A stretch of 64,000 nt of DNA from Anolis carolinensis (taxonomy: Eukaryota). Positions 20,259 to 64,000 of this stretch are shown piece by piece (position 1 is the stretch's first letter; every line of letters begins with the position of its first letter). The DNA lies in NCBI RefSeq assembly GCF_035594765.1, contig NC_085846.1, positions 21,563,190 to 21,627,189 on the forward strand, written 5' to 3'. Both the position numbers and the translations under genes were made by a program. The notes under the pieces are model-generated. The model was not told the origin of the DNA and ran no database searches. It saw only the letters and a list, made by a program, of their open reading frames with translations.

Positions 20259-23200
20259 ATGGGGAGCCTGTTTACAGTTGTGGTGGGACTCCTGATCCTT
20301 ATGCCCCTCCTGGGGAATATTTTCTTTCCTTACCTTTGGTTGGATTTATCTTTTCTCTTCACCATGCTACGTGTGGGATATAGGTGGCAGAAACGTATCA
20401 AAAGCAACCCACCCCTTACCGTGCTGGACATCTTCTTGGAGAAAGTCCAGAAACAACCAGAAAAGCCTCTGGTTCTCTTTGAAGAAGAAGTCTACTCCTA
20501 CAGGGACATCGACAACTGGAGCAGTAAAGTGGCCAGAGTGCTACAAAGCCATGTGGGCCTGAAAGAAGGGGAAACAGTGGGTGTTTTCTTGAAGAATGTC
20601 CCTGCCTATCTTTGGATCTGGATGGGCCTGGAGAAGATTGGCTGCACCATGGCCTGCGTCAACTATAACATCCGATCCAAGTCCTTGTTACATGTGATCA
20701 GCTCCTGTGAAGCCAAGGTGCTACTGACAACGCCAGGTGAGGGCTGCCTAGGTATAAGAAATGGTTACAGCAGGAGGGATATGTCTATTCTGTGCTAGTC
20801 ACATGATCACACCTAGCACATACATATCAGGACAAACACCTTTGTTATTGCATATCTCTTCATTTGGGCAATTGTGCTGATTTGCCAAACCAAGGTCCTG
20901 CAATCATCCTTCCACATACCCATGTAACTCATACTTCCTTGGCTTCATATATTTTTTACAGCACTTTCTCAGTGTCAGCAATAATTATTACCAACATTAT
21001 AGAGTTAAATAGTAAGGGAGGGGAAGGGGGGTGGGGAGAATGCCACATACTGATACCTGTCAGCTCTATATGGGGCATTTTTTTCTAACCCCAGTTGAGG
21101 AAGTTAGTGACCCTACTTTGGTACCATCTTAAGAATTCTGGTAACACCTTCATGAATGGCCATTGTTAATCCAGTTTTACAAGATCTTTAGCCTTCTCTG
21201 CCAGAGTGCTGGTTCATCAACAAACTACAACTTCACAGGGTTATATAGCACTGAGCCATGGCAGTTGTAGTGGTGTCAAACTGTATTACTTCTACAGTAT
21301 AGATGCACTCGTAGTAACTTGACCATTTTAACATGTATTTAGCAATTGCATGTGATGGGATTTCTGGGACTTGAAAGCCAAAAACATCTAGGGACCCCAG
21401 GTTGAGAACCACTGCCCTATATGCAAAAGTTACATTGGTGGAAATGGTTCATAAACAATATACTACATAATTTCTAAGTGGGAATTTATATTTTGACCTT
21501 CCAAGACAGGAGAAATTTGTTGGGATTCATCCTGGACTACTCAAGTCTAAATGTAGTCAGATAGATGATAGAGTTAGATTGAGGGAATCCTTCCCCCCCC
21601 CCCTTTCCAAAGCATGCCTAGATAGGATTCACCATTGTTTCCTGGTTCCCATCCTATTTAGGTCAGCCCACCCTTTGATGTTCCTAGAAATGTAATCTCT
21701 CCTAGGGCTTTGACGTAACTTCCCCAATTTGATCCTTTGGAATGTTTATGGCCCTAGAGAAGAAGTGACCAGACCCACGAGGCTGACCGCCATTCCAGCT
21801 TCCTGCTTTGTTCCAGAGAGGACGCACCTCTGTCCTCTATTAGTCAAGATGTAGCCTATCTATAGAGTTTTTTATTTTAATCCGTCTATGTGTATTAGAA
21901 CAGGATAGATCAGTTAGTTAGATCCAAACCTTTTCTATCCATCAATGGATTTCTTTTTACCTCAATAAATGCTTTTAATCTTTAAAGCTAACTTTGCATC
22001 CCTTTTGCCTTCCTGATGACACAGAGGCCTTCCGAAACTCACACTCGCGTAAGTCTCAAGTCTCACCCTGCTGCAATTCTTTACTCTGCTATTTTAATGG
22101 GAATTTGCCTCATAAAAGAGGGTGATTAGAGCTTAACGGCTCTTCCATTCCCAACAAAGGGTTACGGGCCCAGAACACTTGTGAGCAGACAAAGGGTTTT
22201 AATGCCCAGGAGGACGCGGAAGTGCTGAGTAAGGATTTTTAAAGGATTGGCATGAAAAAGGAGCAAAGATTATTTGGAGGTAATTTTTTGGATTTTATTT
22301 GTTGATTTTTGGAGCATCTTAATTTTTGGAAGCTGAAGATGGAAAGGAGACAAGATCCTTTTGTTGCATAATTTCTAAGTGGGAATTTATATTTTGACCT
22401 TCCAAGACAGGAGAAATTTCAAAAAGGAGTGCCTAAAAAGTCAATTCAGATTTCAGTTCTTTTTCTCTTTAAGACTTTCAGGGTGCAATTGAAGACGTCC
22501 TGCCTACTCTAAACAATAAAGGGGTACGCGTTTTCTACCTGAGTGATGACTCTCCAACTGAAGGTGTGGAAGCTTTGCAGGGACAGATCAAAACCAGCTC
22601 AACTGAACCAGTTCCTGCTTCTTTCCGAGCCAACATAACTTCCAAATCAACATCCTTGTATATTTTCACATCTGGAACCACAGGTGAGGACAAAGGATGT
22701 AACCTCAATGACAGACCATGTTGTTGGACTTCAAAATATTTTCCTGATTTTTTATGGCATGCCTTTGCAATGGCCAGTGAGTGGTTTACACCATGCTTTG
22801 CAATTCTTGGTACTTCCAGCTAGAAAAATCAAAGTTTTCAACGCCTTGAAGACTTATCACCAGGCACAGAATTGGGTTGAATGAATGTGTGGTTTGATTC
22901 AGTGGAAGGGAGTTTCAAATTAAATTTGACCCAATCCTCACAGTACATGCAAGCGTATTTTAACCAATGATGTTTCCCAGCCTATTCTCCACTCAAGTGC
23001 ACTTCTGCAAATTTTCCCCTAACATTAAGTCCAGTCGTGTCCGACTCTGGGGGCTGGTGCTCATCTCCATTTCTAAGCTGAAGAGCCGGTGTTGTCTGTA
23101 GACGCCTCCATGGTCATGTGGTTAGAATGACTGCATGGAGCGCCGTTACCTTCCTGCCAGAGTGGTACTTATTGATCTACTCACATTCATATGTTTTCGA

Positions 23201-32200: not shown

Positions 32201-33076
32201 TAATTGTCGATCTCTGAGAGGGTGATGTGATTTGAGACGTCTACCAATGACATTAACATAAAAACTCAAGTCATGGTCCAGAAACCAGTTCAATACTAAA
32301 ATAGCATGGGAAACTGGGTATTTTAGGTAGAATAATTAAAGAAGAGGCTGACAACTTCCTGGTGTGTCTCCCACCAAGTACTCCCAATTCCATTGGAGAC
32401 TCCAGGGTTGGTTCTGATGCTTCTACTTCTGCTGAAATTTGGTGGTACAAATGGAATATCACTTATATGTATTTCAGAAATACAAAATACTAAAAAAATC
32501 AAAAATTCTACCTATGGGCAGCTGAATTTTTTTTCCTGATACTCCAGTGTATACCAATTTTGTTTCATGAGCAAGAATATTGAAAATATTGCATATAACA
32601 TTCTCTTCAGGTTGTGTGTATAAGGTGTATATGGAACATAAATGGATTTCATGCTTACATCTGGGTCTCATCTCCAAGATACCTCTTTATGTACTGTATA
32701 TGCAAACATTTCGGACAAGGAATGATCAATGTGTAGCTGCCAAGGTTCATTCCAAGGGTGTGTCAAGATTACAGGACCGTGGCAGGGCATTCACCACCCT
32801 ACTTCTATACCTATCTTGCTGCTCTGTCTGTTGTTCTTGGCCTGCTGTAGCTCTGATGTGATTAAATTGACTCAAGTTCATTTCTTATGTTTCTTGCAGG
32901 ACTTCCTGGAGCTCACTGAGACATTCAAACAACGCAAAGGTCAATTGGTGAAGGAAGGATTTGACCCCACCGTCATCAATGACCCCTTGTACTTCTTAGA
33001 TGACTCAGAAAAATGTTATGTGCCCATGACTCAGGAGATTTTCAGCTCCATCACAGAGAAGAAACTGAAATTGTGA
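20259..33076 (+). CDS. SLC27A2-like: Very-long-chain acyl-CoA synthetase / FATP (SLC27A2/SLC27A5-type), copy 2, complete, 619 aa
   Basis: Exons 20259-20736 (478), 22474-22683 (210), 23986-24141 (156), 26435-26559 (125), 27365-27559 (195), 28720-28810 (91), 29149-29347 (199), 30049-30146 (98), 31897-32027 (131), 32900-33076 (177); total 1860 nt, open frame. Hydrophobic N-terminus, [35 protein letters not shown], ends -LKL. Confidence 0.96.
21518..22366 (+). mobile_element. Ty1/Copia 5' LTR (21518-22156) + PBS + truncated leader
   Basis: TGTTGGGA..TCCCAACA termini; AATAAA 21964-21969; GGTTACGGGCCCAG at 22160-22173 resembles the copia half-tRNA-iMet PBS (GGTTATGGGCCCAG). Confidence 0.82.
23015..23315 (-). 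mobile_element. Sauria SINE
   Basis: Reverse complement of the SINE body and tail. Confidence 0.85.
24445..24579. mobile_element. hAT MITE with SPIN-type TIR
   Basis: TIR CAGTGGTTCTCAACC; 8-bp TSD GTCTAGGT; related copy 27981-28115 and partial copy ~21355-21414. Confidence 0.88.
25030..25450 (+). mobile_element. L2 LINE 3' end
   Basis: agggccttctcggtggtggctccccagctgtggaactccctccc..taagccgccctgagtccc..(AAAT)n tail. Confidence 0.8.
30700..31025 (+). mobile_element. Sauria SINE
   Basis: Full head (A/B boxes), body and ACCTTT tail. Confidence 0.88.
31265..31466. other. Assembly gap
   Basis: Run of N. Confidence 1.
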
Positions 33077-34196: not shown

Positions 34197-35135
34197 TTAG
34201 AGGAAGAATGGCATTTGAAGTTTGAGTATATGCTTCAGACCTTCTTTCATTTCTTTATTCCGCAGGGAAAAGATGATTGGGTTTAGTGCTGGGGTCACAA
34301 CATTGTAGAGCACAGATGCCAAGGTGTCTATCTTTACCGAATGGCAAGAGCTGGGTCGGTTGTAATTGAACATGCAGGTGCTGTAGAAGATGGTGACCAC
34401 TATGAGATGTGAGGAACAAGTGGAGAATGCTTTGTGGCGGCCCTGGGTGGTGCGGATCCTCAGAATTGCCCTCACAATGTGGCTGTAGAAAGCCATGATG
34501 CATAGAAAAGGACTAACGCCAAGCAGCAAGGTGACTACAAACAATGTGATTTGGTTCAAGAACGTGTCCTGGCAAGACAGTTTGAGAAGCTGTGGAACAT
34601 CACAGAATACATTTTCAATTTCATGAGAAGCACAGAAAGGCACCTGAGCAGTCATGGCAGTGTGTAGCATGGCATTGAGGAAGCCACAGACCCAGGAGGT
34701 TGCCACCAAACCTGTGCACAGCTTTCTGTTCATGAAGAGAACGTATGTAAGAGGGTGGCAGATAGCAACATAGCGGTCATATGCCATTACAGCCAAAAGG
34801 AGACACTCAATGCCCAGAAAGGCCACTAGGAAGTAAAGTTGGACTAGACAGCCCTGAATAGATATTGTCTTTATCTCAGTCACTAGATACTTTAGCATGT
34901 GGAGCAGCGTGACTGAAGTGTAGCAGATGTCCAGGAAAGACAGGTGTCGGATGAAGTAGTACATGGGTGAGTGTAGCCCAGAGTTCAGGGATGCTGTGGC
35001 CAAGATAAGCCCATTGCCAAGCAAAGCAGTGAGATATATCATGAGAAATATGAGAAAGAACAATAGGTGGGGCTCAGGGAAGCTGGAGAAACCCAGGAAG
35101 ACAAAAGTCACCGTTTGATTTTGGACCAGCTCCAT
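34197..35135 (-). CDS. Olfactory receptor, class II-type, intact 312 aa
   Basis: Single-exon ORF with N-glycosylation site NQT and motifs GN, LHSPMYYF, MAYDRYVAICHPLTY, FCDVP, KAFSTCSSHL, PALNPIIFSLRN; splice acceptor (ttccccatttcag) 9 nt upstream of the ATG. Confidence 0.97.
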   Translation of the reverse strand: MELVQNQTVTFVFLGFSSFPEPHLLFFLIFLMIYLTALLGNGLILATASLNSGLHSPMYYFIRHLSFLDICYTSVTLLHMLKYLVTEIKTISIQGCLVQLYFLVAFLGIECLLLAVMAYDRYVAICHPLTYVLFMNRKLCTGLVATSWVCGFLNAMLHTAMTAQVPFCASHEIENVFCDVPQLLKLSCQDTFLNQITLFVVTLLLGVSPFLCIMAFYSHIVRAILRIRTTQGRHKAFSTCSSHLIVVTIFYSTCMFNYNRPSSCHSVKIDTLASVLYNVVTPALNPIIFSLRNKEMKEGLKHILKLQMPFFL

Positions 35136-37677: not shown

Positions 37678-39543
37678 GGGTGTCATATTCTCCTTATGAG
37701 AGAAGAATTTGTGTGAAATGTCCATTTGTTGTCCCTTACTTTGGATCAGTACTTTTGTTGCTTTTGTTTTTAATGGCTTGCTTTGAGATGACACCAATAT
37801 TCACACAAAGTTACTTACCCACACTCTTGGTGTTGTATTCCTGAGATAGTTCCTGCAATGTATATTTGAAATTGCTTTCCTGAGTTTTTCTTGGACCTGC
37901 TCATGGTGCCTCTTCCGGCTTTTCCATTGGGTACCCACTACCACTAATTAATGTGAATAGGTGGTCTTCATTTGCACCTATAATACGTTGTGTCAGTTCA
38001 TTAACAAAGAGAACTTTTTTGAGATATGAAACAAAATCTAGCTTATCTGAACTCTATCCAATCCATCCTCCAAGAAGATCAGTGCAGGGTCCATGTTTCT
38101 TCAATGGCCTCACCAACAAATCATTTCTGATAGCAGCAGTATAGAAGTTGGGCAAGATTTGGCCCCATCTGCACTGCAGTTTAATAATGCAGTTCAATGC
38201 ATTTAAACTGCATTATGAAGCTACATCATATAGCAGTGTAGATGGGGTCTTTATTCTCTTCTCTATTGAAATAACATATATATTCACGGATGGCTTTTAT
38301 ATGCACTCAGCAATAGTATTATTTGGCAGCAAGCTTTAGGACAGTCCTTAGTGACAATGTAATTCTGTGAATGTGTAAAATTTATAGCTATGAGCCAAGC
38401 CCCATTCTTTGATTTAAATTAGTCTTATGTTCTGTTATGTTGAACCTAGGCAATAAAAAGTGGTGTCAAATTGCATTAATTCTAAAGTGTAAATGAGCTC
38501 TTAGTAGTTCCATTGCTGCTGCAGAGACTACAATACAAACCGAGGACTGAAATGTCAAGAAAGCGATTCCATCTAAGAACATTAGTAAGAAATTATTTAT
38601 TTAAGAGCAGCTTAACAGTGGAATGGACTACTGCAAAGATTGGTGGAAAGGAATGGAATAGGCATGGTGTAGCAGAAAAAGAACTATTTATTGTAATATA
38701 CACTTTACATAATTCATAACAGAGGTATAAATCTTTATTACCTATTCACGGGAGAGTATGAAGTATTGTAAAAGTTTAGGGTTAGACTGATTTTAACTCA
38801 TTTTAATGATTTTTTCACAAACTGCATTAATTTACGCAGTGTAGATGCAATCAAAAGTAGAATTTCTTGGCTCTACCTCTTCCCTGACTTACTAGACACT
38901 CACAACTGTGAGTGATCGGAGTCTGTCTCCTAACCTTTGGGATGTAGTATATTGATATTTCTATTCTCAGAGTCTCTCATCAAACAGGAATACAATCCAT
39001 CACAATTCCTATTCAACTGAGATCACATATAGGATGTGTATGTAAACATAAGTCTGCTCTGCCCTAATCAACAGCATTGCAGACTGTCACTCACAGTGGC
39101 TGATGCCTGGTAAATCAGAATTGGGGATCCCACTGACACCTTTCAGTGTTGGTGGGATTGCATGCTTCTGTAAGAGGATGTGCTGCTGGCAATGTCTCCC
39201 ATGTCAGACAGGTTTTGTGGAGGAGTCAGACGAAATGTGCTAAACAGCTACAGGCAACAGTGATAGTAGGGAATGACATTAGGGCCGGATCTCTCATAGA
39301 CTATGGCAGTGGCACCTTAACTAACACTTGTTAGTACTGTGCAGAAGGAGGTATGGTAAACCTCTTTGGAATGACGTGATGAGATATTATCAGATAATCC
39401 AAAATGAAACAAGAGATCAAGCCATAGGATTACTATGTGGTCCTATGATTACTCGGAAGTATGTTCCCTGAACTTTAATTAGAGCAACCCCAAACTAAGC
39501 AGGGTGTGTATAAGACTGCAGTGCATATCTTGAGAATGAGCCC

Positions 39544-42500
39544 CTATGAATCACAAGGACAGATTTTCAGGGGGATCTCTTTGTCCCAGACCTGGAAAAA
39601 AGGAAACACAGCCTCGGAGAAAGGATAGTTGAAGGTGAAGAGATGCTCCATGGAGTCACCATCATAAAAGGAAAGAATGTCAAAATCATACTCCAGGTGT
39701 ACCTTGATCCTTTTTGGAGATTTCCACAGTATTAGAATGGTGGAAGGCGTGGTGGAAGCTGCATATTCTCCCCCGTTCAAGTTCAGCACCCAATAGCCTT
39801 TGGTAGCAGTGACGTACGGCTGCCACTTTCTCTCTGCTGATTTCCGGGCAACACCAATGGCCCATCCCTTGGCCTTGCCCACTTCCACCATCCATTCCAC
39901 AGTCCCAGAGTCAATTCCTTCGGCTCCCAGGACACACGGAGAAAAATTGAAGCGCTCAGGGTTGTCAGGAAGAGACTGGGCATGGGTGCCCATATGCACA
40001 CTTTTCCGATCTTCAGAAAGGACGAGGGCAGGGTAGGCAGTCTTAGGATCCAACACAATCTCCACTGGCGATCAAAAACAGAGAGAAGGTTAGTGTGATC
40101 CTTTCCAAAGTCATCAGGACACTGGCCTGAATCCAAACACAGTCAACCTGTTGAAATTAAGTTATGACTAATATAAATCTCATTTATTTCAATTGCTCTT
40201 CCAACTAGTACAGGGGTCCCCAAACTAAGGCCCGGGAACCAGATGCATTCCCCAAAGTCATTTACCTGGCCCCTGTCCTAAACTTTAGACTTAGGGTTGG
40301 CCTAAGTCTACCTGATCTTTGGAGGTCTCTTTGCTTAGCTACAGCCGTATGAGACCATCTAGATGGCTTTTGGAGGTCACTTTCATTACCTTTGGTCCTA
40401 TGAGGCCATCTAGATGGCCTTTGATGTTGCCTTTACTTAGCTATGGTTTTATGAGATTGTCTTGATGGCCTTTGGGGGCCCCTTTCCTTACCTATGGTCT
40501 TATGAAACCATCTAGATGGTCTTTGAGGATACCTTTCCTTATCTATAGTCTTATGAGACCATCTAGATGGCTTTTAGAGGTCACTTTCCTTACCTATGGT
40601 CCTATGGGACCATCTAGATGGTCTTTGAGGATCCCTTTCCTTATCTATGGTCTTATGAGACCATCTAGATGGCTTTTGGAGGTCACTTTCATTACCTATG
40701 GTCCTATGAAACCATCTAGACGGTCTTTGAGGATCCCTTTCCTTATCTATGGTCTTATGAGACCATCTAGATGGCTTTTGGAGGTCACTTTCATTACCTA
40801 TGGTCCTATGAGACCATCTAGATGGTCTTTGGAGGTCTCTTTGCTTACCTATGGTCTTATGTAATCGTCTAGATCAGGGGTTCCCAAACTAAGGCCCTCT
40901 AAGGTCATTGACCTGGCCTCTGTCCTAAACTTTAGACTTAGGGTTGACCTAGGTCTGAAATGACTTGAAGGCACACAACAACAACAATCCTAATTTTGGA
41001 CTATTTCATCATAGTCCGGCCTCCGCAACAGTCTGAGGGACTGTGAATCGGCCCTTCACTTAAAAGGTTTGGGGACCCCTGAACTAGTATGACTAACTTT
41101 AGACCCACAGATTTAGAAAAAAATAAAGAACAGGGTAATTCCAAGGTAAAGATCAAGATATTCTGTCATTTGAAGAGCAGTGGAGATTTAATAGTGCCTG
41201 TACTCAAACGGACAATGTGTTGGTAATCTCACATCAGAACAACATATTTTATGTGTGGCCAAGACCCAAAAATAACATATAAAACAGCTCTGTATGTAAG
41301 CAAAACAATACGTTTGAGAACCACATATGTGGGCCTGATCGAGGTAAATTGTACAGGTGATAAGGAAATATACACACACATACACACACACACACACACA
41401 CAGTTTTATTATATTTATTTACTATATTGTTATAAGTGTCTTACTTTAACTTATTGCATAGAGTGTAATCAAGTCATATCAAGGCTTGTTGTTTGGTATG
41501 ATATTGTGACATGGCCTAAGGGCTAATCAATAAAAAAAAATATTCAGTACCTGAGATATTCTCTGCATTGTCCAGTGTTTTGCCAATCCATCAGCCCCTA
41601 AAATCCATCTGCCGGTAACTCACCTTTCTTCTGAGTCCCACAAAACCTGTCAACAAGATTTGCTTGTATTTTTTCATCCTTCTTCCTTTTTTCCTCCTTG
41701 GTCAAAGGTTTTTTAACTTGACGAAAATCTATTAGCAAAAAAAAAAGTTGGGGGTGAGAGCACTTTTGCTTCTCTTATTTCTAGAATCAATACAAGATCA
41801 ATTAGGATCATTTTCTAAGTAGCATCATCACGGTGCTATAATTATGGATGGTTGAATTAAATCGAGTGCATGTAAATTGGTCAATAAATCTTTTATCACA
41901 GAGATGCCTTATGGCTCCAGCTACTTCTTCTTAGGAAACTGGATTCTAGGAGAAAGCTGGAAACCCTAAAATCTCTTGCCTCTCTGAAATGGCATGGACA
42001 TGCACCAAGCAATATAAATGGTGGATTTGGTCATGTAATCTGAATTTGAAATAGATGGGCAGATCTATATACCAATCAAAGATCTGCATGACTTTCTCAA
42101 GCATATATAGTATGACTTTCCAATCTGTGGGGGATACATTCTTAGGGCCCTTCCACACAGCCATATAACCCAGAATATCAAGGCAGAAAATCCCACAGTA
42201 TCTGCTTTGAACTGGGTTATCTTAGTCCACACTGCCATATATTCCAGTTCAAAGCAGACAATGTGGGATTTTATTCCAGCTATGTGGAAGGAGCCTAAGA
42301 TACACATACAGATATCTGAAATATGGATTAAAAACATATCCTACATTTTGACTACACTTGGGTTGCAAGCATAACATAGACTTGCATTGGAGGATCTACA
42401 GAGTTCAAAAACTCTTCCATGGGGGTATATTTTTTGGAGCATGAATAAGTAAATCTGTTGTTATAAAATTCATGGATAATAGGGTTGTACTATTGGAGCT

Positions 42501-43342
42501 CCCGTGGCGCAGCGGATTAAACCGCCGAGCTGCTGAACTTGTTGGCAGTTAAAATCTGGGGAGCGGGGTGAGCTCCTACTGTTAGCCCCAGCTCCTGCCA
42601 ACCTAGCAGTTCAAAAACATGAAAATGTGAGTAGATCAATAGGTACTGGTCCGGTGGAAAGGTAACAGCACTCCATGCAGTCATGCCAGCCAAATGACCT
42701 TGCAGGTGTCTACAGACAACGCTGGCTCTTTAGCTTAGAAATGGAGATGAGCACCAACCCCCAGAGTCGGACACGACTAGAATTAATGTCAGGGGAAAAC
42801 CTTTACCTTACTATTGACCAGAACACTGAAAGCAATTAGAATTAGTTACTATAGAAAAGGAAAGCTCCTTCAAATACTTGGGTGGTGCCTGTGGCCCCAT
42901 CTATACTGCCATATAATGCAATTTGACTGCACTGAACTAAGTTATATGAATCTATACTGCCATATAATCCAGTTCAATGCAGTTAAACTGCATTCTAATT
43001 CTGCATTATTTGGCAGTGTAGATGGGGCTTGAGTCCAGCATTTCTTTTTTCTTTCTTTCACTTACATGATGGCATCTCGTTTCTAACTTTTGCCGACAGA
43101 TCCTTCCTGTTTATTCGGTCAAAGATGTTGGCGGCCACCTCGACTGCCTTGTCCTCATCAAATGTCGTGACCATGAGACGTGACAGCTCAGTGGCGTCTG
43201 CCTTCTCGGTCTTACTGTGCCGAATGGGCTTGAAGCCCTCCTCGACTGGGTATTCTTCAAGGTGCATCTTAAATGTCTTCATTTCCACATCTCGCAGATC
43301 TTCAATATAGTGAAACAGCTTGCAGCGGACGCTATCGGACAT
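39544..43342 (-). CDS. PYD (pyrin domain) - PRY/SPRY (B30.2) fusion protein, ~300 aa, 3 coding exons
   Basis: Exon A 43342-43066 (277 nt, PYD MSDSVRCKLFHYIEDL..FKMHLEEYP..TEKAD..INRKDL; in-frame TAA upstream; donor gtaagt). Exon B 41728-41624 (105 nt, YFRQVKKPLTKEEKRKKDEKIQANLVDRFCGTQKK; donor gtgagt). Exon C 40064-39544 (521 nt, VEIVLDPKTA..PERF..WMVEV..LEYD..FPFF). All junctions phase 1; total 903 nt, open. Joining of the exons is inferred. Confidence 0.82.
40211..41081 (+). mobile_element. Composite non-autonomous hAT (OposCharlie1/OC1-like) with two 5' ends
   Basis: TIR CAGGGGTCCCCAAAC/GTTTGGGGACCCCTG; TSD AACTAGTA (40203-40210, 41082-41089); second 5' end at 40876. Confidence 0.88.
40310..40875. 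repeat. 51-bp minisatellite (~11 copies, alternating A/B variants)
   Basis: CCATCTAGATGG-type palindrome at 40355, 40406, 40508, 40559, 40610, 40661, 40712, 40763, 40814. Confidence 0.92.
42495..42812 (+). mobile_element. Sauria SINE
   Basis: Head, body and ACCTTT tail. Confidence 0.88.
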
Positions 43343-43694
43343 CTTAGCTCCCAGTTAGGATGTATCTGGGGAAAGAGGGGAAAAGATGTTATGAAGAGCC
43401 CAATAGAAGAAAAACTGGGGAGCAGGAAACATTGAAAGAAGGAGGAGGCTCCTGACTAACCTCAATAAAAGTACTTTTAAGGGGTTAGTGCTGTATTTTA
43501 AATGATTAATTGGATCTTTAAATATTCAATTGGCATTGAATATTATATCTTCTTTAATTGTGGTTTTACTTCACGACATCTTGACTTTTTTTTCGAAAAA
43601 AGTACTTTTTTGGATCTTATTGTGATTTGTCTTGAGCTCCAGGTCTGAAGAAAGGTAGAATAGAAATCCAATGGATAAAAGTTGTTGTAGTTCA

Positions 43695-48985: not shown

Positions 48986-51900
48986 TCACTCCAAGTCATT
49001 GAGTAGCTGTAGTTCGAAGACCTGCAGATGTTCCTTAAGCCGCCGCTGTGCATCAGCACCATGTGGCTGCCGTTCCCGCTGCAGCTCACAGATCCGCAGG
49101 CGGAGTCGCTGCTCCCGGCGCCGACAGGCTTGCAGTTGCCGCTGTGCTTTCCCCAAAGCATTGAGCGCAGCTTCTGCCCGTCTTTTCCACAGCAAGGCAC
49201 TACCCACCTGGTAGCTGTGCTCATTCTGGATGTAGGCACCAGCGGGAGGAGGGAGGCGTAGCATGTAGAGAGAAAGGGACACGGGGTGGGATGGATCGCC
49301 CACCGGTTCTGGGAGAGCGGGAGAAGGAGATGCTTCCTCCTGAGCCGTAGCAGCTGGCGACTGTTCTAGGGGAATGGCTGACAAAGTCGCCAAGGGCTCC
49401 GGTTCTGGCTCAGGAAGGATGGGCTGGCTTCGAGGCTCACCACTAGTGGGAGCAGCTCCAGGACTCGGTAGTTCTTGGGCTGGGAAGCAGGAGATATCTG
49501 TGCACAATGGAGCAGGCTCCTCCTCTGGACATGGATTGCAGCTGTGAGAAAGGAAGAGAATCGGGGTCAGGTGGGAAAGCAGTAGGAAAGATCATCTACC
49601 ACAGAAGTAGGTCATGAAAAGGAATTAAGCATTAAGATGCTAAGGACCCACTGAATGCATGTTCTTGCATATACAGCCTTCACAATACCAAGGCTTCAGC
49701 AGGCCAGCTTGGATCATCACATAAAGTGTCACACTTGGACATGGAAAACAGGGAAACTCTCTAGGCAGTATTGTAAAGATTGTAAAGATAAAAAGAGACG
49801 TATTGTAAAGATAAAAAAATAGCAAGGGCTATTGTAAAGATAAAAAGAGACGAAGGTGCGAAAGAGACCAATGGACACTAGTTACAATAAAGGTAAAAGT
49901 TTTCCCCTTGACATTAAGTCTAGTCGTGTCCGACTCTGGGGGTTGTTGCTCATCTCCATTTCTAGGCCGAAGAGCCGGTGTTGTCCGTAGACACCTCCAA
50001 GGTCATGTGGCCGGCATGACTGCATGGAGCACCGTTACCTTCCTGCTGGAGCAGTACCTATAGATCTACTCACATTTGCATTTTTTTCCAACTGCTAGGT
50101 TGGCAGAAGCTGGGGCTATAGCGGGAGCTCACCCAGCTCCCCGGATTTGAATTGCCAACCTTTTGGTCAGCAAGTTCAGCAGCTCAGCGGTTTAATCTGC
50201 TGTGCCACCAGGGGCTCCACTAGTGATAATAGCCATGTCCAAATTTAGTCCATAAACTATAATCCAAGTTCTATTTCTTCCCAGAATTAACTATGCCGAA
50301 GCCTAGTGTCTACCCCTTCTCCCCTTCTCCCACTTCCCAACCTGCTTATTTTGCCATGTTCTTAATTTCATGCTCCATAATAGCATCCTATAATGCTGCT
50401 TGAAAAATGCCTCTATACAAAGTCTAGTATCCCTGATCCAAAAGTCAGCTTAAGAGTGAATTCTTACCTAAGTTCCTCTTAATACGGTGACAATTCCTTC
50501 AGAGAAAACCTCCACAGGATGTAAGATGAGAGTTAGAAGGCCAGTACTCACCTCTGCTTCTGCTGCCGTTTTGCAAGTCTGGAGTTGCTTAGCTTTGATT
50601 TTTGGCGTGGTTTGGCATGAAACTCAAATATAGTAGGAACAGCACCCTCCTTGAGCCGATGGTAACCGCTAGAAGGGAAACAGTGGCATTTATAAGGCAT
50701 GAATGGCTACAGTAGCCTGGCATAATACGAGTGTTATCCAGAAAGTTCATTACGTTTTGGAATTAAAAATAAACGAGGTATAGGAGAAAACATTTACCAT
50801 ATTCAGTTGAAAGCCAGACCCAAATACTAGTTATCACCATAGTCCCCACTGAAATCTAGGTAGTTATCATAGCGATAAAAGTGTTTGAAAAGCCCTCCCC
50901 CCCCCAAGATTCCCGCCTGGCTTGCGTCCTGAACCAGGCTGGCTTCCCTTCCCTCAGCTGTCAAGTGGTGCGCTCAGCTTTCCGCACGATCTTCCTAGAT
51001 CGCTCTTTTGTTTTGCAGATGCTTGCAAGGAAGGTTTTTTGGGACAGGAAAGGTGTGCTTCTTGCAAAACCTTTCAACTGAATATGGTAAATGTTTTCTC
51101 CTATACTTCGTTTATTTTTAATTCCAAAACGTAATGAACATTCTGGATAGCCCTCGTACTTTTTGAATTATGGACCTCTGGGCAGAAAAATGAGTTTCTG
51201 AAAGCGTCAAGATTCTAGAAGCTGTTAGCATCATTTCTGCTTCACAGTATTATCTCTGCAACCCCATGAATCTAAGGGAAACACTCCTGTGTGACTCTAA
51301 ATACTATGATTTATGCTCCCGGCCCCACCAACAAAGCCAAGGAAGTCCATCTTGATATCTCACTACAGCTTTCTCCTTTCCCTCTCACATGCAGATCTGA
51401 CATTGCTTCTACTGTGTCAGTCTGTCATCCAGTATCGTCTACTGTGAACTGTAATGATTCTACAGATATAAAGCAAAGCCAGTCCCTGTGCTCTAACTCC
51501 CTTTTCTCTCACCTCTTCACCACACACAAGTACCAAACTGATTAACCCATGTGTGGTGAGTATCTAGTCACTTTGTAGAGCACAAAAATGTGACACTTCT
51601 AACAACTCAAAGAAAGACACAGCTCCACTGGCTCTTGGAGGTTTTTGTTTTGTTTCATAGTGGGGTGTCTTCCAAGAGTGTTATCATACCTATTATCATA
51701 CCTATTTTGATTAATTCATGCAGTTTTTTTAACTTTAAAATTTTGCAGACTGCTGGGGCTTTCGGAATTGGTGGGGTTCTCAAAGCTTGCACTGAACTTG
51801 CCTGAAGAGTCACATGTGTCCCCTGAACCACATTAATCTCAAGCCAAAATAACCTGTCCTAAATGCCCAGAGATGTTAAATGTAATTTGGATTTGGGAAG

Positions 51901-60766: not shown

Positions 60767-61059
60767 ATCTCAGGCATTTCAAATAAGCAATATTCAATAT
60801 GTAGTAGCAAGTACATATTCCTATTTAAATATACAAACAAATCCAGAATTCCAGATAGTCTAACTATACCTAAACGTTGTCTTTAAATTCTCCTGAAAGA
60901 AAAAGTAAATGTCCACATGGAGGCAAGACTGAGCACCCATCTACACTGCCATGTAAAATGCAGATTATGAGTCTACATATATGGCAATGTAGACTCATAT
61001 AATCCACTTCAAAGAAGATAATCTGGATTTGATATGGCAGTGTAGATGGGGCCTGAGAA

Positions 61060-62114
61060 GCGAGAAAAACTAAAAGTAATAATCAAGCGCAAGCAAAGAG
61101 AGGGCAGGCAAGGAAGCATAAATAAAAAGCAATAAAATGATTGTACAAAGACATAAAATATAGAAAGCTAGAAGCAAAGCATAGGAGCAAGAATGGAAAA
61201 AAGAAGACCAGAAGGAAGAAAAGAGGAAAAGGAGCCAGAGATAAAGAATGAAGAGCAGCAACCAAAGAAGACGAAGAAAATCAAAAGGTAGAGGAGGAGA
61301 AAAAGGGAAAGAAGAAGAGAGGGAGGAGGATGAAAACAAAAAAGAAGAACAGGAGAAGGCAGAAGAGGAGGAAAAGGAAGAGGAGGAGGAGAAAAGGAGA
61401 AGGAGAGAAAGAAAGAAAGGACGATGGGGGTGAAAGGTAGAAGAAGAGTCCAGAAAGAAGAAAAAGAACAAGAAGCAGAGGCACACAAGAAGACAGAGAA
61501 GGGGAAGAAAGAAGAAGAAGAACTAGGATCAAAAACCAGAAGGAGGATGGAAGGAAAAGTGGGAAAGAAGAAGAAGAGAAAGAGGAATAGGATCCAAGGA
61601 AGAGGAAAAGGATGAAGAAAAGGAAGAGGAGCAGGAGAGGGAAAGCATAGCAGGTTAAACCACCAGCTTCAGTAAATCTTATCAATCAAAAGGTTGACGG
61701 TTTGAAGCCTGGGTTAGGGTGAGCTCCTGGCCTTTAGCCCAGTTTCTGCCTATCAGTTCAAAAGCAAAATGTGAGTAGATAAATAGGTACCACTTAAAAG
61801 CGGGGAGGTATTAAGGCACCCATAAGGATATGCCAGAAAAATGTGATCAAGGAGGAAGTTTACGAACAAAGCTCTTTGGCTGCGAGATGTAGCAACAGCA
61901 CCCCCTCCCGCAATGGCTGAAACTGAGTACAAGCCTCCAAGATGCAAAAGATGGGAAAAGCCTATATATACCTCTATCTAAGTACAATTTTCTGTCTTGT
62001 CAGTGTATATATGTCATTGAATATTTGCTGCATATGCATGTTCTGTGATCTGCCCTGAGTCAACTTTGGGGTGAAAAGGGAGGAATATAAATATTGTAAA
62101 TAAATTTTAAAAAG

Positions 62115-62181
<67 letters not shown>

Positions 62182-63520
62182 GAAGAAGGTGGAGAGGGAG
62201 CAAAAAGATGGAGAAAGGGTGGAGAAAGGGGAAGAGAAAAAAGAACAAGAAACAGGAACACAAGAAAGGAGAGGAATAGCAAAAAGAAGATGAAGAAGTG
62301 GGAGAAAAAGAACAGAAAGAGAAGGGGGAAGAAAAAGAGCAAAGGATGATGTGGAGAAGGAGGAGGTGGAGCAACAGCAGGCAGGTAAGATGAAAAGAAT
62401 GAAGAGGAGGAGAAAAAGGGAGTATGAAGAAAAATGGAGGAAAAATAGGAATAGTAAGGAAAAAAGGAGAAGCCAAAGAAGAGGAGGAATAAGAATATGG
62501 GGAGGGAGAAAAAGTTCAAGAGGCTGAAGAAAAAAAAACAGGATAAGAATAATATGGAGATGATAGAAGAAGAACAGCAGGAGGAAGAAGAAAAGAACAG
62601 AATTAGAGGAGGAAAAAGTAGAGAATGACAAGAAGAAAGAGAGGGTGAGAATAGGAGGAGTAGGAAGAAAAGAAGGAGAGGAGGAATAAAAAGGCACCAA
62701 AGTAAATGAAGAATAAGAAGAGGAGGAAGGAGAAGAAGGAGGAGGAATGGAAATAAGGAGCAGAAGGAAATAAAGAACAAGAGGAAGAAGGAAGAAAAGT
62801 CAAGAAAAAAAGGAGAAGAGGAGGAGGAAATAAAAACAAGGAGCAAAAGGAAATGAAGTACAAGAGGAAAAGGAGGAAGGAGAAGAATCCAAGGAAGAGG
62901 AAGAAGAGAAAACAGAAGGAAAAGAAAAAATAAAAAGAAGGAGAAGAAGGAAATAGAAAACAAGAGGAAGAGGAGGAATGAAGAGAATAAAAAGTCACGA
63001 AAGAGAGAGAAGGAAAAGAAAGAATAAAAAGAAATAACAGAAAGAAATGGAGAACAAGAGAAAGAGGAGGAATGAAGAAAAAGTCACGGAAGAGTGAGAA
63101 GGAAGAAAGGTTAGAGAAGGATGAAGTGAGAAGGGAAGAGGAGAAGGAAGAAGAAGAGTAGGAGGAGAAAAGAAGAAGAAAAAAGAAAATAGGAGATTGT
63201 CAATGAAGAGTAGGGAAAGAAGAACAGAGTGGGAGTAGGAGGAGGAAGTAGAGGAGATGGCAGAACAGGAAAAAAGAGGAATAGAAGGAGAATAGAGAGG
63301 AGAAGGAGGAAGAGGAAGATGGACAGGAGAACAAGTGAAAGAAGTGGATGAGGAGAAGGCCATTGAACGAGAAGGAAGAGATGACATGAAAGTAGTAGTA
63401 GGAAAAACAGGAAGAAGAAGAGGAAATTAAAAAAGAAGAGGAGAACGAATAAAAAGAAGGAACTAAAGGAAAGGAAGAACAAGAGAAAGAAGTGAGGAAA
63501 AAGAGGAAGAATTGTTGGAA
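61060..63520 (+). repeat. Purine-rich (GA) low-complexity tract, interrupted by a SINE and a (GT)n(GA)n microsatellite (62118-62181)
   Basis: Plus strand almost all A/G, with stops in all frames. Confidence 0.9.
61645..62105 (+). mobile_element. Sauria-SINE-related element with L2-like tail
   Basis: SINE-like head and gtgagtagataaataggtacc, ending tgatctgccctgagtc..aatataaatattgtaaataaa. Confidence 0.6.
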
Positions 63521-64000
63521 ATGGCAACCTCCCAAGCCTCTCACCATTTATTTGTTAATATATATATTTGCTAGCCTGTATTCTATATGTATGTTGATTT
63601 GTCAGTTTGACTGTACCTCTTTGGTGTGGGAGGGACTATAGGCATGTGATTGTACTGAACATGTTCAGACTCAGGACTCCATTTTGTATTCACTTTTGCA
63701 TCAGACCTCAGTGGAGGTGGATGCAAGTATGTGTTTGGTCTTCAATAAAAGCAGGTGTTTCTGTCCAGACCTCAGTGGAAGTGGGTGCATGTATGTTGCT
63801 GTTTGGACTTCAATATAGAAGTATGCTTATGAACTTCAATAAGTACAAGTATACTTAAAGACTATAGGCTATTGACTAAGAATGATACCCTGTGTACTCA
63901 ACACAGAGAAACTACATCCTACATAACTGAACTTCAATAAGAAATGTGCCTGTATGATGAATGAATCCAAGATGTTGTGAGTAAACAAGATATGTTATTT

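What the first reader, a model, noticed from the sequence alone, without database searches (positions are those of the whole stretch)
41624..43342. The PYD looks NLRP3-derived, implying exon shuffling and convergence on a pyrin-like architecture
Manual alignment to human NLRP3 PYD as I recall it (RCKL..Y.EDL.DV..K.FKMHLE.YP...G..P.....TEKAD...L..LM....E.KA...A..IF..INR.DL) gives roughly 42/87 identities. The NLRP3 N-terminal S-x-R-C-K stretch is kept. The 277-nt phase-1 PYD exon followed by a short phase-1 exon ending in KK resembles the NLRP3 exon 1/2 layout as I recall it, but the next exon is a TRIM/BTN-type B30.2 exon rather than NACHT. Human NLRP3 lies among OR genes near TRIM58 (1q44), and here an OR is next door. 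Inference: an NLRP3-like 5' half was joined to a TRIM-type 3' exon, independently of MEFV.
Basis: partly seen in the sequence, partly recalled or inferred. Interest (0 to 1): 0.75.

Follow-up and report, generated by a model that had tools for sequence, protein, structure and literature searches.

The report
Ancient PYD–B30.2 "mini-pyrin" gene
This lizard window holds an expressed three-exon gene that joins an NLRP3-type pyrin domain to a TRIM-type B30.2 domain; the same gene is found in lizards, snakes, tuatara, turtles and caecilians, is hidden under wrong database names, and is a likely but untested inflammasome sensor or adaptor.

Summary
On the minus strand there are three phase-1 exons: PYD (43342-43066, 277 nt), linker (41728-41624, 105 nt) and PRY-SPRY (40064-39544). 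Assembled transcript contigs from three studies carry exactly these two GT..AG junctions. The PYD is 43/88 identical to human NLRP3 PYD (82 bits, against 47 for NLRP12 and 24 for pyrin and ASC).

This is not a squamate novelty. Proteins of about 300 aa with the same three-exon layout occur in lepidosaurs, turtles and caecilians, so the fusion dates to the tetrapod ancestor or earlier.

- **PYD tree:** sauropsid copies form a 99/99 clade with mammalian NLRP3 PYDs. It excludes turtle and alligator NLRP3-like, ASC and turtle pyrin-type PYDs (AU p=0.001 and p=0.014).
- **B30.2 tree:** the family is one clade (100/98) next to sauropsid TRIM-type and vespryn-type domains, far from a fish NLRP3-like B30.2.
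- **What holds:** it is a mosaic and not MEFV-derived.
- **What does not hold:** the direction NLRP3 to this gene is unproven, the linker matches neither parent, and the OR-synteny argument is weak.

Both domains are under purifying selection. ASC-coupled sensing is inferred, not shown. The scan had already noted this same stretch (s1-517355).

The parts
43066..43342 (-). Exon 1 (coding part): start codon plus the whole pyrin domain. 277 nt, 92 codons plus 1 base, phase 1. Donor GTAAGT follows at 43065.
   Evidence: PYRIN, 1.1e-22; NLRP3 PYD, 82 bits. RNA contigs end this exon at 43066.
43343..43418 (-). 5' untranslated sequence that runs on from exon 1 in transcript contigs. The true transcription start is not defined.
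   Evidence: table 8. The X12 contig reaches 43366 with 27 further letters not placed. An X4 contig covers 43238-43418.
41729..43065 (-). Intron 1 (1337 nt, GT..AG). It is full of interspersed repeats, including a tRNA-derived SINE near 42495-42800.
   Evidence: Joint 41728|43066 in X5, X6 and X12. Very high repeat depth at 42080-43000 (table 2). Sequence.
41624..41728 (-). Exon 2: a 105-nt, phase 1-1 linker exon. It is Lys/Glu-rich, ends in KK, and is predicted as a low-confidence helix.
   Evidence: both joints. No similarity to the NLRP3 linker or to TRIM/BTN proteins. AF2 linker pLDDT about 58.
40065..41623 (-). Intron 2 (1559 nt, GT..AG). It holds a 51/102-bp tandem repeat at 40317-40861. 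No B-box, coiled-coil or NACHT exon.
39544..40064 (-). Exon 3 (coding part): complete PRY-SPRY (B30.2) domain and stop codon TAG at 39546-39544.
   Evidence: PRY 5e-22, SPRY 1.4e-16. (BTN2A2 147 bits, TRIM7 134, pyrin 116). (trees).
39000..39543 (-). 3' untranslated region. It continues below 39000 by about 180-240 nt in the contigs.
   Evidence: table 8. Contigs X12/1, X5/15 and X6/21 run unbroken from 40064 down to 39000 and beyond.
34197..35135 (-). Neighbouring intact olfactory receptor gene (312 aa). It is context only and not part of the gene.
   Evidence: 7tm_4, 3.4e-48. An OR also lies next to the gecko orthologue.

Best explanation
The stretch is a functional, transcribed three-exon gene for a protein of about 300 aa: an N-terminal pyrin domain, a 35-residue charged linker, and a C-terminal PRY-SPRY (B30.2) domain. 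It belongs to an old tetrapod gene family, called PB here, that is present in squamates, tuatara, turtles and caecilians. Databases name its members TRIM39-like, TRIM7-like or butyrophilin-like.

The protein is a mosaic.
- Its PYD belongs to the same PYD lineage as mammalian NLRP3.
- Its B30.2 belongs to the class-IV TRIM type.
- Each domain sits on its own phase-1 exon.

The simplest origin is therefore one exon-shuffling event in or before the tetrapod ancestor. It was independent of MEFV/pyrin and of the fish NLR-B30.2 fusions.

Inferred mechanism: the B30.2 domain binds a ligand, either microbial or a host 'guarded' protein. Clustering on a multivalent ligand brings the PYDs together, and they nucleate ASC filaments and caspase-1 activation. 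This is AIM2/pyrin logic without a built-in oligomerisation domain.

Shown: gene structure, splicing, conservation, and the affinities of each domain. Inferred: ligand binding, ASC coupling, and the direction of the shuffle.
For: **Structure and expression**
- Exons and phases. Pfam domains.
- Spliced contigs from three studies carry both GT..AG junctions.

**Family and distribution**
- Orthologues of 284-303 aa with PYRIN+PRY+SPRY in more than 30 lepidosaur species, including Sphenodon.
- The profile search adds seven turtle and two caecilian species.
- The ESM Atlas holds a 68-member cluster with this architecture.
- Exon sizes are 277/111/521 (gecko), 277/111/518 (turtle), 265/87/509 (caecilian) and 277/105/521 (this window), all phase 1.

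**Selection**
- dN/dS anole-gecko is 0.28 for the PYD and 0.15 for the B30.2.

**PYD affinity**
- NLRP3 82 bits, NLRP12 47, pyrin 24, ASC 25.
- In the careful tree, sauropsid PB plus mammalian NLRP3 form a 99/99 clade.
- AU tests reject a PB plus pyrin-type clade (p=0.014) and a mammalian NLRP3 plus sauropsid NLRP3-like clade (p=0.001).

**B30.2 affinity**
- PB clade 100/98, and its internal order follows the species tree. Its sister (98/91) is turtle RFP-like/TRIM15-like plus squamate thaicobrin-like domains.
- The fish NLRP3-like B30.2 sits on a branch of 3.5 changes per site.

**Fold**
- AF2 mean pLDDT is 84.8: two well-folded domains and a floppy helical linker.
- Foldseek top hits are BTN3A1, BTN2A1 and TRIM7 B30.2, with target TM 0.9 or more.

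**ASC coupling is plausible**
- Anolis sagrei has ASC (P0161).
- The NLRP3 residues most needed for filament formation and ASC nucleation are K23/K24, M27 and E15, then D31, R80 and R81 (PMC9106292). Most are kept in lepidosaur PB proteins.
Against: - No experiment shows that the protein is made, binds ASC, or binds any ligand.
- The protein has no oligomerisation domain (no NACHT, coiled coil or B-box), so it could equally cap or inhibit PYD filaments.
- Turtle copies have changed several interface residues (E15 to N, K24 to M, M27 to F, D31 to N).
- The NLRP3-specific E18/R43/D60 triad is not kept.
- The caecilian PYD is only marginally NLRP3-like (53 bits, against 49.5 for ASC and 49 for pyrin).
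- A single origin for the PYD part rests on an AU test that merely fails to reject PB monophyly (p=0.119).
- The PYD alignment has only 92 columns.
- The run type is 'RNA?' by guess. The spliced contigs argue for RNA but give no level or tissue.
- No MEFV or NLRP12 sequence could be placed in the trees.
Confidence: 0.6

Rival explanations
1. One reading: within squamates, the 5' half of an NLRP3-like gene (PYD exon plus short exon) was joined to a TRIM/BTN B30.2 exon at an OR-rich locus. On this view the gene is a lineage-specific novelty that converged on pyrin.
For: - The PYD is far closer to NLRP3 than to any other human PYD.
- The layout of a PYD exon plus a short symmetric exon matches human NLRP3, where the short exon covers aa 95-134 (bioRxiv 10.64898/2026.04.17.719140).
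- An OR gene is adjacent.
Against: - The same three-exon gene, with orthologous PYD and B30.2, occurs in tuatara, turtles and caecilians.
- The linker exon shows no similarity to the NLRP3 linker.
- The neighbours are SLC27A-like genes, not the human 1q44 genes.
Confidence: 0.04
2. Internal deletion: the gene is what remains of an ancestral NLRP3 that carried a C-terminal B30.2, as zebrafish NLRP3 does, after its FISNA-NACHT-LRR exons were lost. All those exons are phase 1, so the reading frame would survive.
For: - Zebrafish NLRP3 is PYD-FISNA-NACHT-LRR-B30.2 (PMC11258412).
- A perch NLRP3-like protein (P0146) has PYD-NACHT-LRR-PRY-SPRY.
- The exon phases are compatible.
Against: - The fish NLRP3-like B30.2 is extremely distant from this one: 23 bits and a branch of 3.5.
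- CDD classes the zebrafish domain as stonustoxin-type.
- The PB B30.2 sits next to TRIM-type domains.
- The fish NLRP3-like PYD (P0146) falls outside the PB/NLRP3 clade.
- Tetrapod NLRP3 proteins described so far lack a B30.2.
Confidence: 0.07
3. MEFV derivative: the gene is the reptile and amphibian counterpart of pyrin/TRIM20 that lost its B-box and coiled-coil exons.
For: - The two end domains are the same as in pyrin.
- Against the family profile, human pyrin B30.2 scores only about 20 bits below the best butyrophilin (165 against 184 bits).
- From general knowledge, human MEFV also lies among OR genes.
Against: - Human pyrin PYD scores 24 bits, against 82 for NLRP3.
- Turtles carry a separate PYD gene whose best solved relative is human pyrin (56.7 bits), as well as PB.
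- The AU test rejects a PB plus pyrin-type PYD clade (p=0.014).
- There are no B-box or coiled-coil remnants in the introns.
Confidence: 0.05
4. Functional rival: the protein is a regulator rather than a sensor. Like PYD-only proteins, it would bind ASC or NLRP PYDs and block or cap filament growth, or tether a B30.2-bound partner to the speck, without starting signalling itself.
For: - It has no oligomerisation domain.
- The linker is flexible.
- Several filament-interface residues have drifted in turtles.
- Squamates also hold PYD-only proteins (P0108 and P0131), so PYD regulators are common there.
Against: - The strongly conserved B30.2 (dN/dS 0.15) implies a specific ligand, which a simple decoy would not need.
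- AIM2 shows that a PYD plus a ligand-binding domain is enough for sensing.
Confidence: 0.25

Closest known systems
Pyrin / TRIM20 (MEFV)
   Same: - N-terminal PYD and C-terminal B30.2 in one cytosolic protein.
- The PYD is on its own first exon and the B30.2 on a single last exon.
- It presumably signals through ASC.
   Different: - It has no bZIP/14-3-3 linker, no B-box and no coiled coil: about 300 aa against 781.
- The PYD is NLRP3-type, not pyrin-type (82 against 24 bits; AU p=0.014).
- Turtles have a separate pyrin-type PYD gene.
NLRP3 (mammalian)
   Same: - The PYD is 48-49% identical and falls in the same 99/99 clade.
- In both genes the PYD exon is followed by a short, phase-symmetric exon.
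- Key filament-interface residues are kept.
   Different: - There is no FISNA, NACHT or LRR anywhere in the window.
- A B30.2 follows instead.
- The short exon is unrelated in sequence.
Class-IV TRIM, vespryn and butyrophilin B30.2 proteins
   Same: - A complete PRY-SPRY fold: TM 0.9 or more to BTN3A1 and TRIM7, 40-44% identity.
- The B30.2 exon begins a few residues before the LDP.TA motif.
   Different: - It has no RING, B-box or coiled coil, no Ig ectodomain or transmembrane segment, and no signal peptide.
- The usual SG(R/K)HYWEVEV motif reads SGT(L/V)EW(V/M)VEVG in this family.
AIM2 (PYD plus ligand-binding domain)
   Same: The logic is the same: one PYD and one ligand-binding domain with no NACHT, so the ligand must supply the clustering.
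   Different: The ligand domain is a B30.2, not a HIN-200. There is no homology outside the PYD, and the ligand is unknown.
Fish PYD-B30.2 and PYD-coiled-coil-B30.2 proteins (for example Lates P0374, Epinephelus P0168)
   Same: The same or a similar domain order.
   Different: These are independent fusions. Their B30.2 groups with a fish butyrophilin-like clade, and their PYD groups with fish PYDs.

Membership tests
Tetrapod PYD-linker-PRY/SPRY family (about 300 aa; database names 'TRIM39-like', 'TRIM7-like', 'butyrophilin-like') | PYRIN plus PRY plus SPRY domains in that order, 284-303 aa in most members, with no other domain | tested here: met
   Pfam on each of the three exons. Orthologues are 57-90% identical in the B30.2.
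Tetrapod PYD-linker-PRY/SPRY family (about 300 aa; database names 'TRIM39-like', 'TRIM7-like', 'butyrophilin-like') | Three coding exons, all in phase 1: about 277 nt, 87-111 nt, and about 510-521 nt | tested here: met
   Window 277/105/521. Gecko, turtle and caecilian.
Tetrapod PYD-linker-PRY/SPRY family (about 300 aa; database names 'TRIM39-like', 'TRIM7-like', 'butyrophilin-like') | Both domains fall inside the family clades | tested here: met
   B30.2 clade 100/98. The PYD sits with Anolis sagrei and Sceloporus inside the sauropsid group.
Pyrin / TRIM20 (MEFV) | B-box and coiled coil between the PYD and the B30.2 | tested here: not met
   No such Pfam hit in exon 2. No further exon is present in the spliced contigs.
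Pyrin / TRIM20 (MEFV) | PYD of the pyrin lineage | tested here: not met
   24 bits to pyrin against 82 to NLRP3. AU p=0.014 against grouping with the turtle pyrin-type PYD.
Pyrin / TRIM20 (MEFV) | B30.2 orthologous to the pyrin B30.2 | tested here: inconclusive
   Human pyrin scores 116 bits against the window's B30.2 exon (BTN2A2 147) and 160-165 against the family profile (BTN2A2 184). No MEFV sequence could be fetched for the tree.
NLRP3 | FISNA-NACHT ATPase module and LRRs | tested here: not met
   tblastn with human NLRP3 finds only the PYD in the window and in the gecko, turtle and caecilian loci. No long ORF is present.
NLRP3 | PYD of the NLRP3 lineage | tested here: met
Class-IV TRIM | RING, B-box and coiled coil (the tripartite motif) | tested here: not met
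   AF2 secondary structure.
Butyrophilin | IgV/IgC ectodomain and a transmembrane segment before the B30.2 | tested here: not met
   The N-terminus is a PYD.
ASC-dependent inflammasome sensor (functional class) | The PYD nucleates ASC filaments once the sensor has clustered | not testable with these tools
   Indirect only. ASC is present in Anolis sagrei, and the interface residues are conserved (PMC9106292).

The most novel reading that the evidence does not exclude
The shuffle ran the other way. The PYD exon of mammalian NLRP3 would be the mammalian orthologue of this family's PYD exon. Stem mammals would have grafted it onto an NLRP3/12-type NACHT-LRR gene and then lost the PYD-B30.2 gene.

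Five observations fit this reading.
- The ML topology is caecilian PB, then sauropsid PB plus mammalian NLRP3/NLRP4-group PYDs, which mirrors the species tree.
- Mammalian NLRP3 PYDs are rejected from grouping with turtle and alligator NLRP3-like PYDs (p=0.001).
- The NACHT of the turtle protein is nevertheless NLRP3-like (411 bits).
- Identity between sauropsid PB and human NLRP3 PYDs is at orthologue level: 44-49%, the same as anole against turtle PB.
- No PB gene was found in mammals.
Probability: 0.2. Interest if true: 0.85.

Novelty: new variant of a known kind. Interest (0 to 1): 0.55.

Why it matters
Inflammasome sensors are usually described from mammals. This gene shows that non-mammalian tetrapods keep a minimal PYD-B30.2 protein. 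It has been conserved since at least the caecilian-amniote split and is under purifying selection. No open-access paper I could find describes it, and genome annotation mislabels it as a TRIM or butyrophilin.

It offers a simple, testable model of how a B30.2 ligand sensor can be wired to ASC without a NACHT or coiled coil.

Its PYD is the closest known relative of the mammalian NLRP3 PYD. Turtle and alligator NLRP3-like PYDs are not close to it. The family therefore bears directly on where the signalling domain of NLRP3, a major drug target, came from.

Tried and rejected
1. **PYD word search swamped by mammals.** I ran it with a squirrel NLRP3 as carrier. It returned only mammalian NLRP3 in the 120 rows shown, so it gave no sauropsid, amphibian or NLRP12 sequences.
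2. **Three high-scoring short PYD proteins (P0072, P0077, P0078).** These turned out to be unnamed exon-1 fragments on short Logan contigs. They fall inside the squamate family clade. They are not NLRP3.
3. **Naming the SLC27A-like neighbour through the ESM Atlas.** This gave only generic AMP-binding clusters, so the human counterpart of the locus is unresolved.
4. **Linker homology.** BLASTP against the human NLRP3 linker and a linker profile against all 450 fetched proteins found nothing outside the family.
5. **Butyrophilin origin of the B30.2.** PDB scores suggested it but the trees did not. Butyrophilin and TRIM39-like groups lie further away than the RFP-like/thaicobrin-like group.
6. 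**Pseudogene or mis-joined model.** Rejected because of the spliced contigs, the intact orthologues, and dN/dS of 0.15-0.28.
7. **Literature.** Searches for any named PYD-B30.2 family found nothing relevant.
8. **Joined protein of this window.** The three exons were never joined or submitted as one protein. They were searched exon by exon by reference, and whole-protein steps used natural orthologues (P0001, P0023).
Full report
**Anatomy**

The gene lies on the minus strand.
- Exon 1 runs from the ATG at 43342 to 43066. It is followed by GTAAGT and encodes 92 codons plus one base.
- Exon 2 is 41728-41624, 105 nt. An AG acceptor precedes it and GTGAGT follows it.
- Exon 3 starts at 40064, behind a polypyrimidine tract and an AG, and runs to the TAG at 39546-39544.
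- All junctions are phase 1.

Pfam finds PYRIN in exon 1 (1.1e-22), nothing in exon 2, and PRY (5e-22) plus SPRY (1.4e-16) in exon 3. Each exon was searched by reference. Every whole-protein step used natural orthologues that the tools returned.

**Is it real and expressed?**

I laid the contigs of four public runs of the same organism on 39000-43600. In three runs from three studies (X5, X6, X12) a single contig of 1.4-1.7 kb covers the following, in order.
- 39000-40064, then a skip of 1559 nt to 41624-41728.
- Then a skip of 1337 nt to 43066-43336/43366.

Both skipped pieces are bounded by CT..AC on the plus strand, which is GT..AG on the minus strand. These are exactly the predicted junctions. 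The contigs also show a 3' UTR that runs past 39000.

The run type is only guessed to be RNA. However, DNA would not produce intron-less contigs with canonical splice ends.

- tblastn of human NLRP3 against the window gives 43/88 identities (48.9%). A MAFFT alignment gives 44/92.
- Against all solved structures, the PYD scores 82 bits (E=2e-22) with human and mouse NLRP3. The other scores are NLRP12 47, NLRP4 45, NLRP14 37, pyrin 24 and ASC 25.
- The S-V-R-C-K start, the exon sizes and phases, the KK end of exon 2, the B30.2 third exon and the neighbouring OR (34197-35135) are all as described.

- A word search with the B30.2 exon found proteins of 284-303 aa carrying PYRIN+PRY+SPRY in iguanians, geckos, skinks, lacertids, an amphisbaenian, Varanus, many snakes and the tuatara.
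- A profile of 15 of them (A1) added seven turtle species, both cryptodires and pleurodires, and two caecilians.
- Nothing from mammals, birds, crocodilians, frogs or salamanders scored at family level. That is absence from predicted proteomes, not proof of absence from genomes.
- The sources call these proteins TRIM39-like, TRIM7-like, butyrophilin-like or ERMAP-like. These names come from the B30.2 alone.
- The ESM Atlas holds a 68-member cluster with this architecture.

I mapped the gecko, turtle and caecilian proteins onto their own loci. All have the same three-exon, all-phase-1 layout.

| Species | Exon 1 (nt) | Exon 2 (nt) | Exon 3 (nt) |
|---|---|---|---|
| This window | 277 | 105 | 521 |
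| Gecko | 277 | 111 | 521 |
| Turtle | 277 | 111 | 518 |
| Caecilian | 265 | 87 | 509 |

None of those loci has a NACHT exon within 10 kb. Between anole and gecko, dN/dS is 0.28 for the PYD exon and 0.15 for the B30.2 exon.

**Origin of the B30.2**

- By score, the nearest solved domains are BTN2A2/BTN3A1 (147/142 bits), then TRIM7 (134), TRIM11 (122), pyrin (116) and TRIM58 (111). With the family profile the order is the same and the gaps are small (184 to 165 to 151 bits).
- In an ML tree of 71 B30.2 domains, the caecilian, turtle and lepidosaur family members form one clade (SH-aLRT 98 in the quick tree, 100/98 in the careful tree). Its inner order follows the species tree.
- The sister of that clade (98/91) is a group of turtle RFP-like/TRIM15-like and squamate thaicobrin-like (vespryn) domains. 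Turtle butyrophilin/TRIM39-like domains and mammalian BTN2A2 lie further off.
- The B30.2 of a fish NLRP3-like protein (P0146) sits on a branch of 3.5 changes per site.
- CDD classes the zebrafish NLRP3 B30.2 as stonustoxin-type (PMC11258412).

The B30.2 is therefore TRIM-type. It entered the gene once, before caecilians and amniotes split, and it is not the fish NLRP3 B30.2. No MEFV sequence could be fetched for this tree. That is the main gap.

**Origin of the PYD**

A length-blind HMMER scan of 1.8 billion representatives ranked hits by best single domain. First came the family's own fragments, then mammalian NLRP3, then the caecilian family member, then everything else. Turtle and alligator NLRP3-like proteins were among the rest, at 43-46 bits.

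A careful tree of 54 PYDs (92 columns) gives these results.
- A 99/99 split holds all sauropsid family PYDs together with mammalian NLRP3 and a mammalian NLRP4-type group.
- The caecilian family PYDs sit just outside it.
- Further out are ASC (including Anolis sagrei ASC), NLRP1/CARD8-type PYDs, snake PYD-only proteins, turtle pyrin-like PYDs, the Pelodiscus and Alligator NLRP3-like PYDs, and fish PYDs.

AU tests:

| Constraint tested | p-AU |
|---|---|
| All family PYDs form one clade | 0.119 (not rejected) |
| Mammalian NLRP3/4 plus sauropsid NLRP3-like form one clade | 0.001 (rejected) |
| Family PYDs plus turtle pyrin-like form one clade | 0.014 (rejected) |

These groups were named after I had seen the tree, so the p-values are somewhat optimistic.

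Three further comparisons bear on this.
- The turtle pyrin-like PYD has human pyrin as its best solved relative (56.7 bits). The turtle family PYD has NLRP3 (65 bits).
- The caecilian family PYD is only marginally NLRP3-like (53 bits, against ASC 49.5 and pyrin 49).
- The NACHT of Pelodiscus NLRP3 is NLRP3-like (411 bits) but nearly tied with another NLRP chain (395 bits). So it is NLRP3/12-like rather than a secure orthologue.

**What this means for the interpretation**

The gene is a mosaic of an NLRP3-lineage PYD and a TRIM-lineage B30.2 on phase-compatible exons. It is not a trimmed MEFV, and it is not a trimmed fish-type NLRP3. Four points do not hold.

1. **Age.** The fusion dates to the tetrapod ancestor or earlier. 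It is not a squamate event.
2. **Direction.** 'NLRP3-derived' assumes NLRP3 was the donor. The data show only shared ancestry. The ML topology and the exclusion of sauropsid NLRP3-like PYDs fit a capture of the family's PYD exon by the mammalian NLRP3 lineage at least as well. I give that reading about 0.2.
3. **The short exon.** It resembles NLRP3's short exon in size and phase: human aa 95-134 form one skippable exon (bioRxiv 10.64898/2026.04.17.719140). It has no detectable similarity to that exon or to any TRIM or butyrophilin.
4. **Synteny.** An OR also neighbours the gecko gene. But ORs are ubiquitous, and the other neighbours here are SLC27A-like genes. From general knowledge, none of the human SLC27A genes lies at 1q44 or 16p13.3, and human MEFV is itself flanked by ORs.

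**Likely mechanism (inferred)**

AF2 on the Anolis sagrei orthologue, with a 28-sequence family alignment, gives a confident six-helix PYD, a low-confidence linker helix (residues 103-122, pLDDT about 58) and a confident B30.2 sandwich. Mean pLDDT is 84.8. Foldseek matches BTN3A1, BTN2A1 and TRIM7 B30.2 at target TM 0.9 or more.

In human NLRP3, the mutations E15R, K23E/K24E and M27E abolish ASC nucleation. D31V, R43E, R80E and R81E weaken it (PMC9106292).
- Lepidosaur family members mostly keep E/D15, K23, K/R24, M27, E30, D/E31, R43, K/R80, K81 and D82.
- Turtles have changed several of these positions.
- The NLRP3-specific E18/R43/D60 triad is not kept.

Anolis sagrei has ASC, and lizards keep caspase-1 (PMC11258412).

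The most economical model is an AIM2-like sensor. The B30.2 binds a multivalent target, the PYDs are brought together, and ASC polymerises. The main functional rival is a PYD-only-protein-like regulator. The family-specific change of the canonical SG(R/K)HYWEVEV strand to SGT(L/V)EW(V/M)VEVG suggests a binding surface unlike that of butyrophilins.

**Novelty**

Members of this family exist as predicted, misnamed proteins in NCBI and UniProt. I found no open-access paper that describes a tetrapod PYD-B30.2 family. Surveys of reptile inflammasomes (PMC11258412) and of sauropsid TRIMs (PMC10445537) do not mention it.

I rate it a new variant of a known kind: a pyrin-like pairing of domains with a different PYD lineage and no tripartite core. 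My results agree with that label and add the phylogenetic range and the affinities of each domain.

Noticed in passing
window 48986-49507 (-): A 173-aa ORF with a proline-rich stretch, an E-H-S-Y motif (which looks like an HCF-1-binding motif) and then a coiled-coil-like Arg/Gln/Leu-rich tail. It resembles the C-terminal exon of a THAP-type protein. It has no Pfam hit.
   Followed up: no
window 10041-10382 (+), 20259-20798 (+), 32729-33076 (+): Exons of one or two SLC27A/FATP-like acyl-CoA synthetase genes lie upstream of the OR. The 20259 ORF is an N-terminal exon with an AMP-binding hit. The 32729 ORF looks like a FATP C-terminus and ends in KKLKL. The paralogue was not identified.
   Followed up: partly
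window 40317-40861: A tandem repeat of 51/102 bp inside intron 2, about 10.7 or 5 copies at 79-88% identity. It is very abundant in transcript contigs, so it is probably part of a dispersed repeat family.
   Followed up: no
window about 42495-42800 and protein P0086: A tRNA-derived SINE sits in intron 1. A 109-aa database protein (P0086) joins the first 40 or so residues of this very PYD to SINE-derived sequence. It is either a mis-spliced transcript or a chimeric gene call from the same species.
   Followed up: no
proteins P0017/P0018/P0025-P0028 versus P0019/P0021/P0357-P0360: Snakes carry two paralogues of the family, of about 285 aa and about 301-313 aa. Thamnophis and Candoia have both on one chromosome. 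They form separate clades in the B30.2 tree, which points to a duplication within snakes.
   Followed up: partly
proteins P0374 (Lates, 318 aa) and P0168 (Epinephelus, 476 aa): Teleosts have their own PYD-PRY-SPRY and PYD-TRIM coiled-coil-PRY-SPRY proteins. Both domains group with fish sequences, so PYD-B30.2 fusions arose more than once.
   Followed up: partly
proteins P0084, P0114, P0145, P0067: Squamates and other taxa show unusual PYD architectures: PYD-CARD-FIIND-UPA (Tiliqua), FIIND-UPA-PYD, and a PYD/CARD-RING-B-box-FIIND protein with several PYDs and CARDs (P0114). P0067 carries 11 tandem PYDs.
   Followed up: no
window 61000-63550 (-): A long CT-rich low-complexity tract gives overlapping Ser/Leu/Phe/Pro-rich pseudo-ORFs of up to 329 aa. 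It also contains a (CA)n run. It is not a gene.
   Followed up: no
window 4448-5083 (-) and 5670-7733: A LINE reverse-transcriptase tail ORF lies next to a GC-rich tandem array that is open in several frames, probably satellite or retroelement debris.
   Followed up: no
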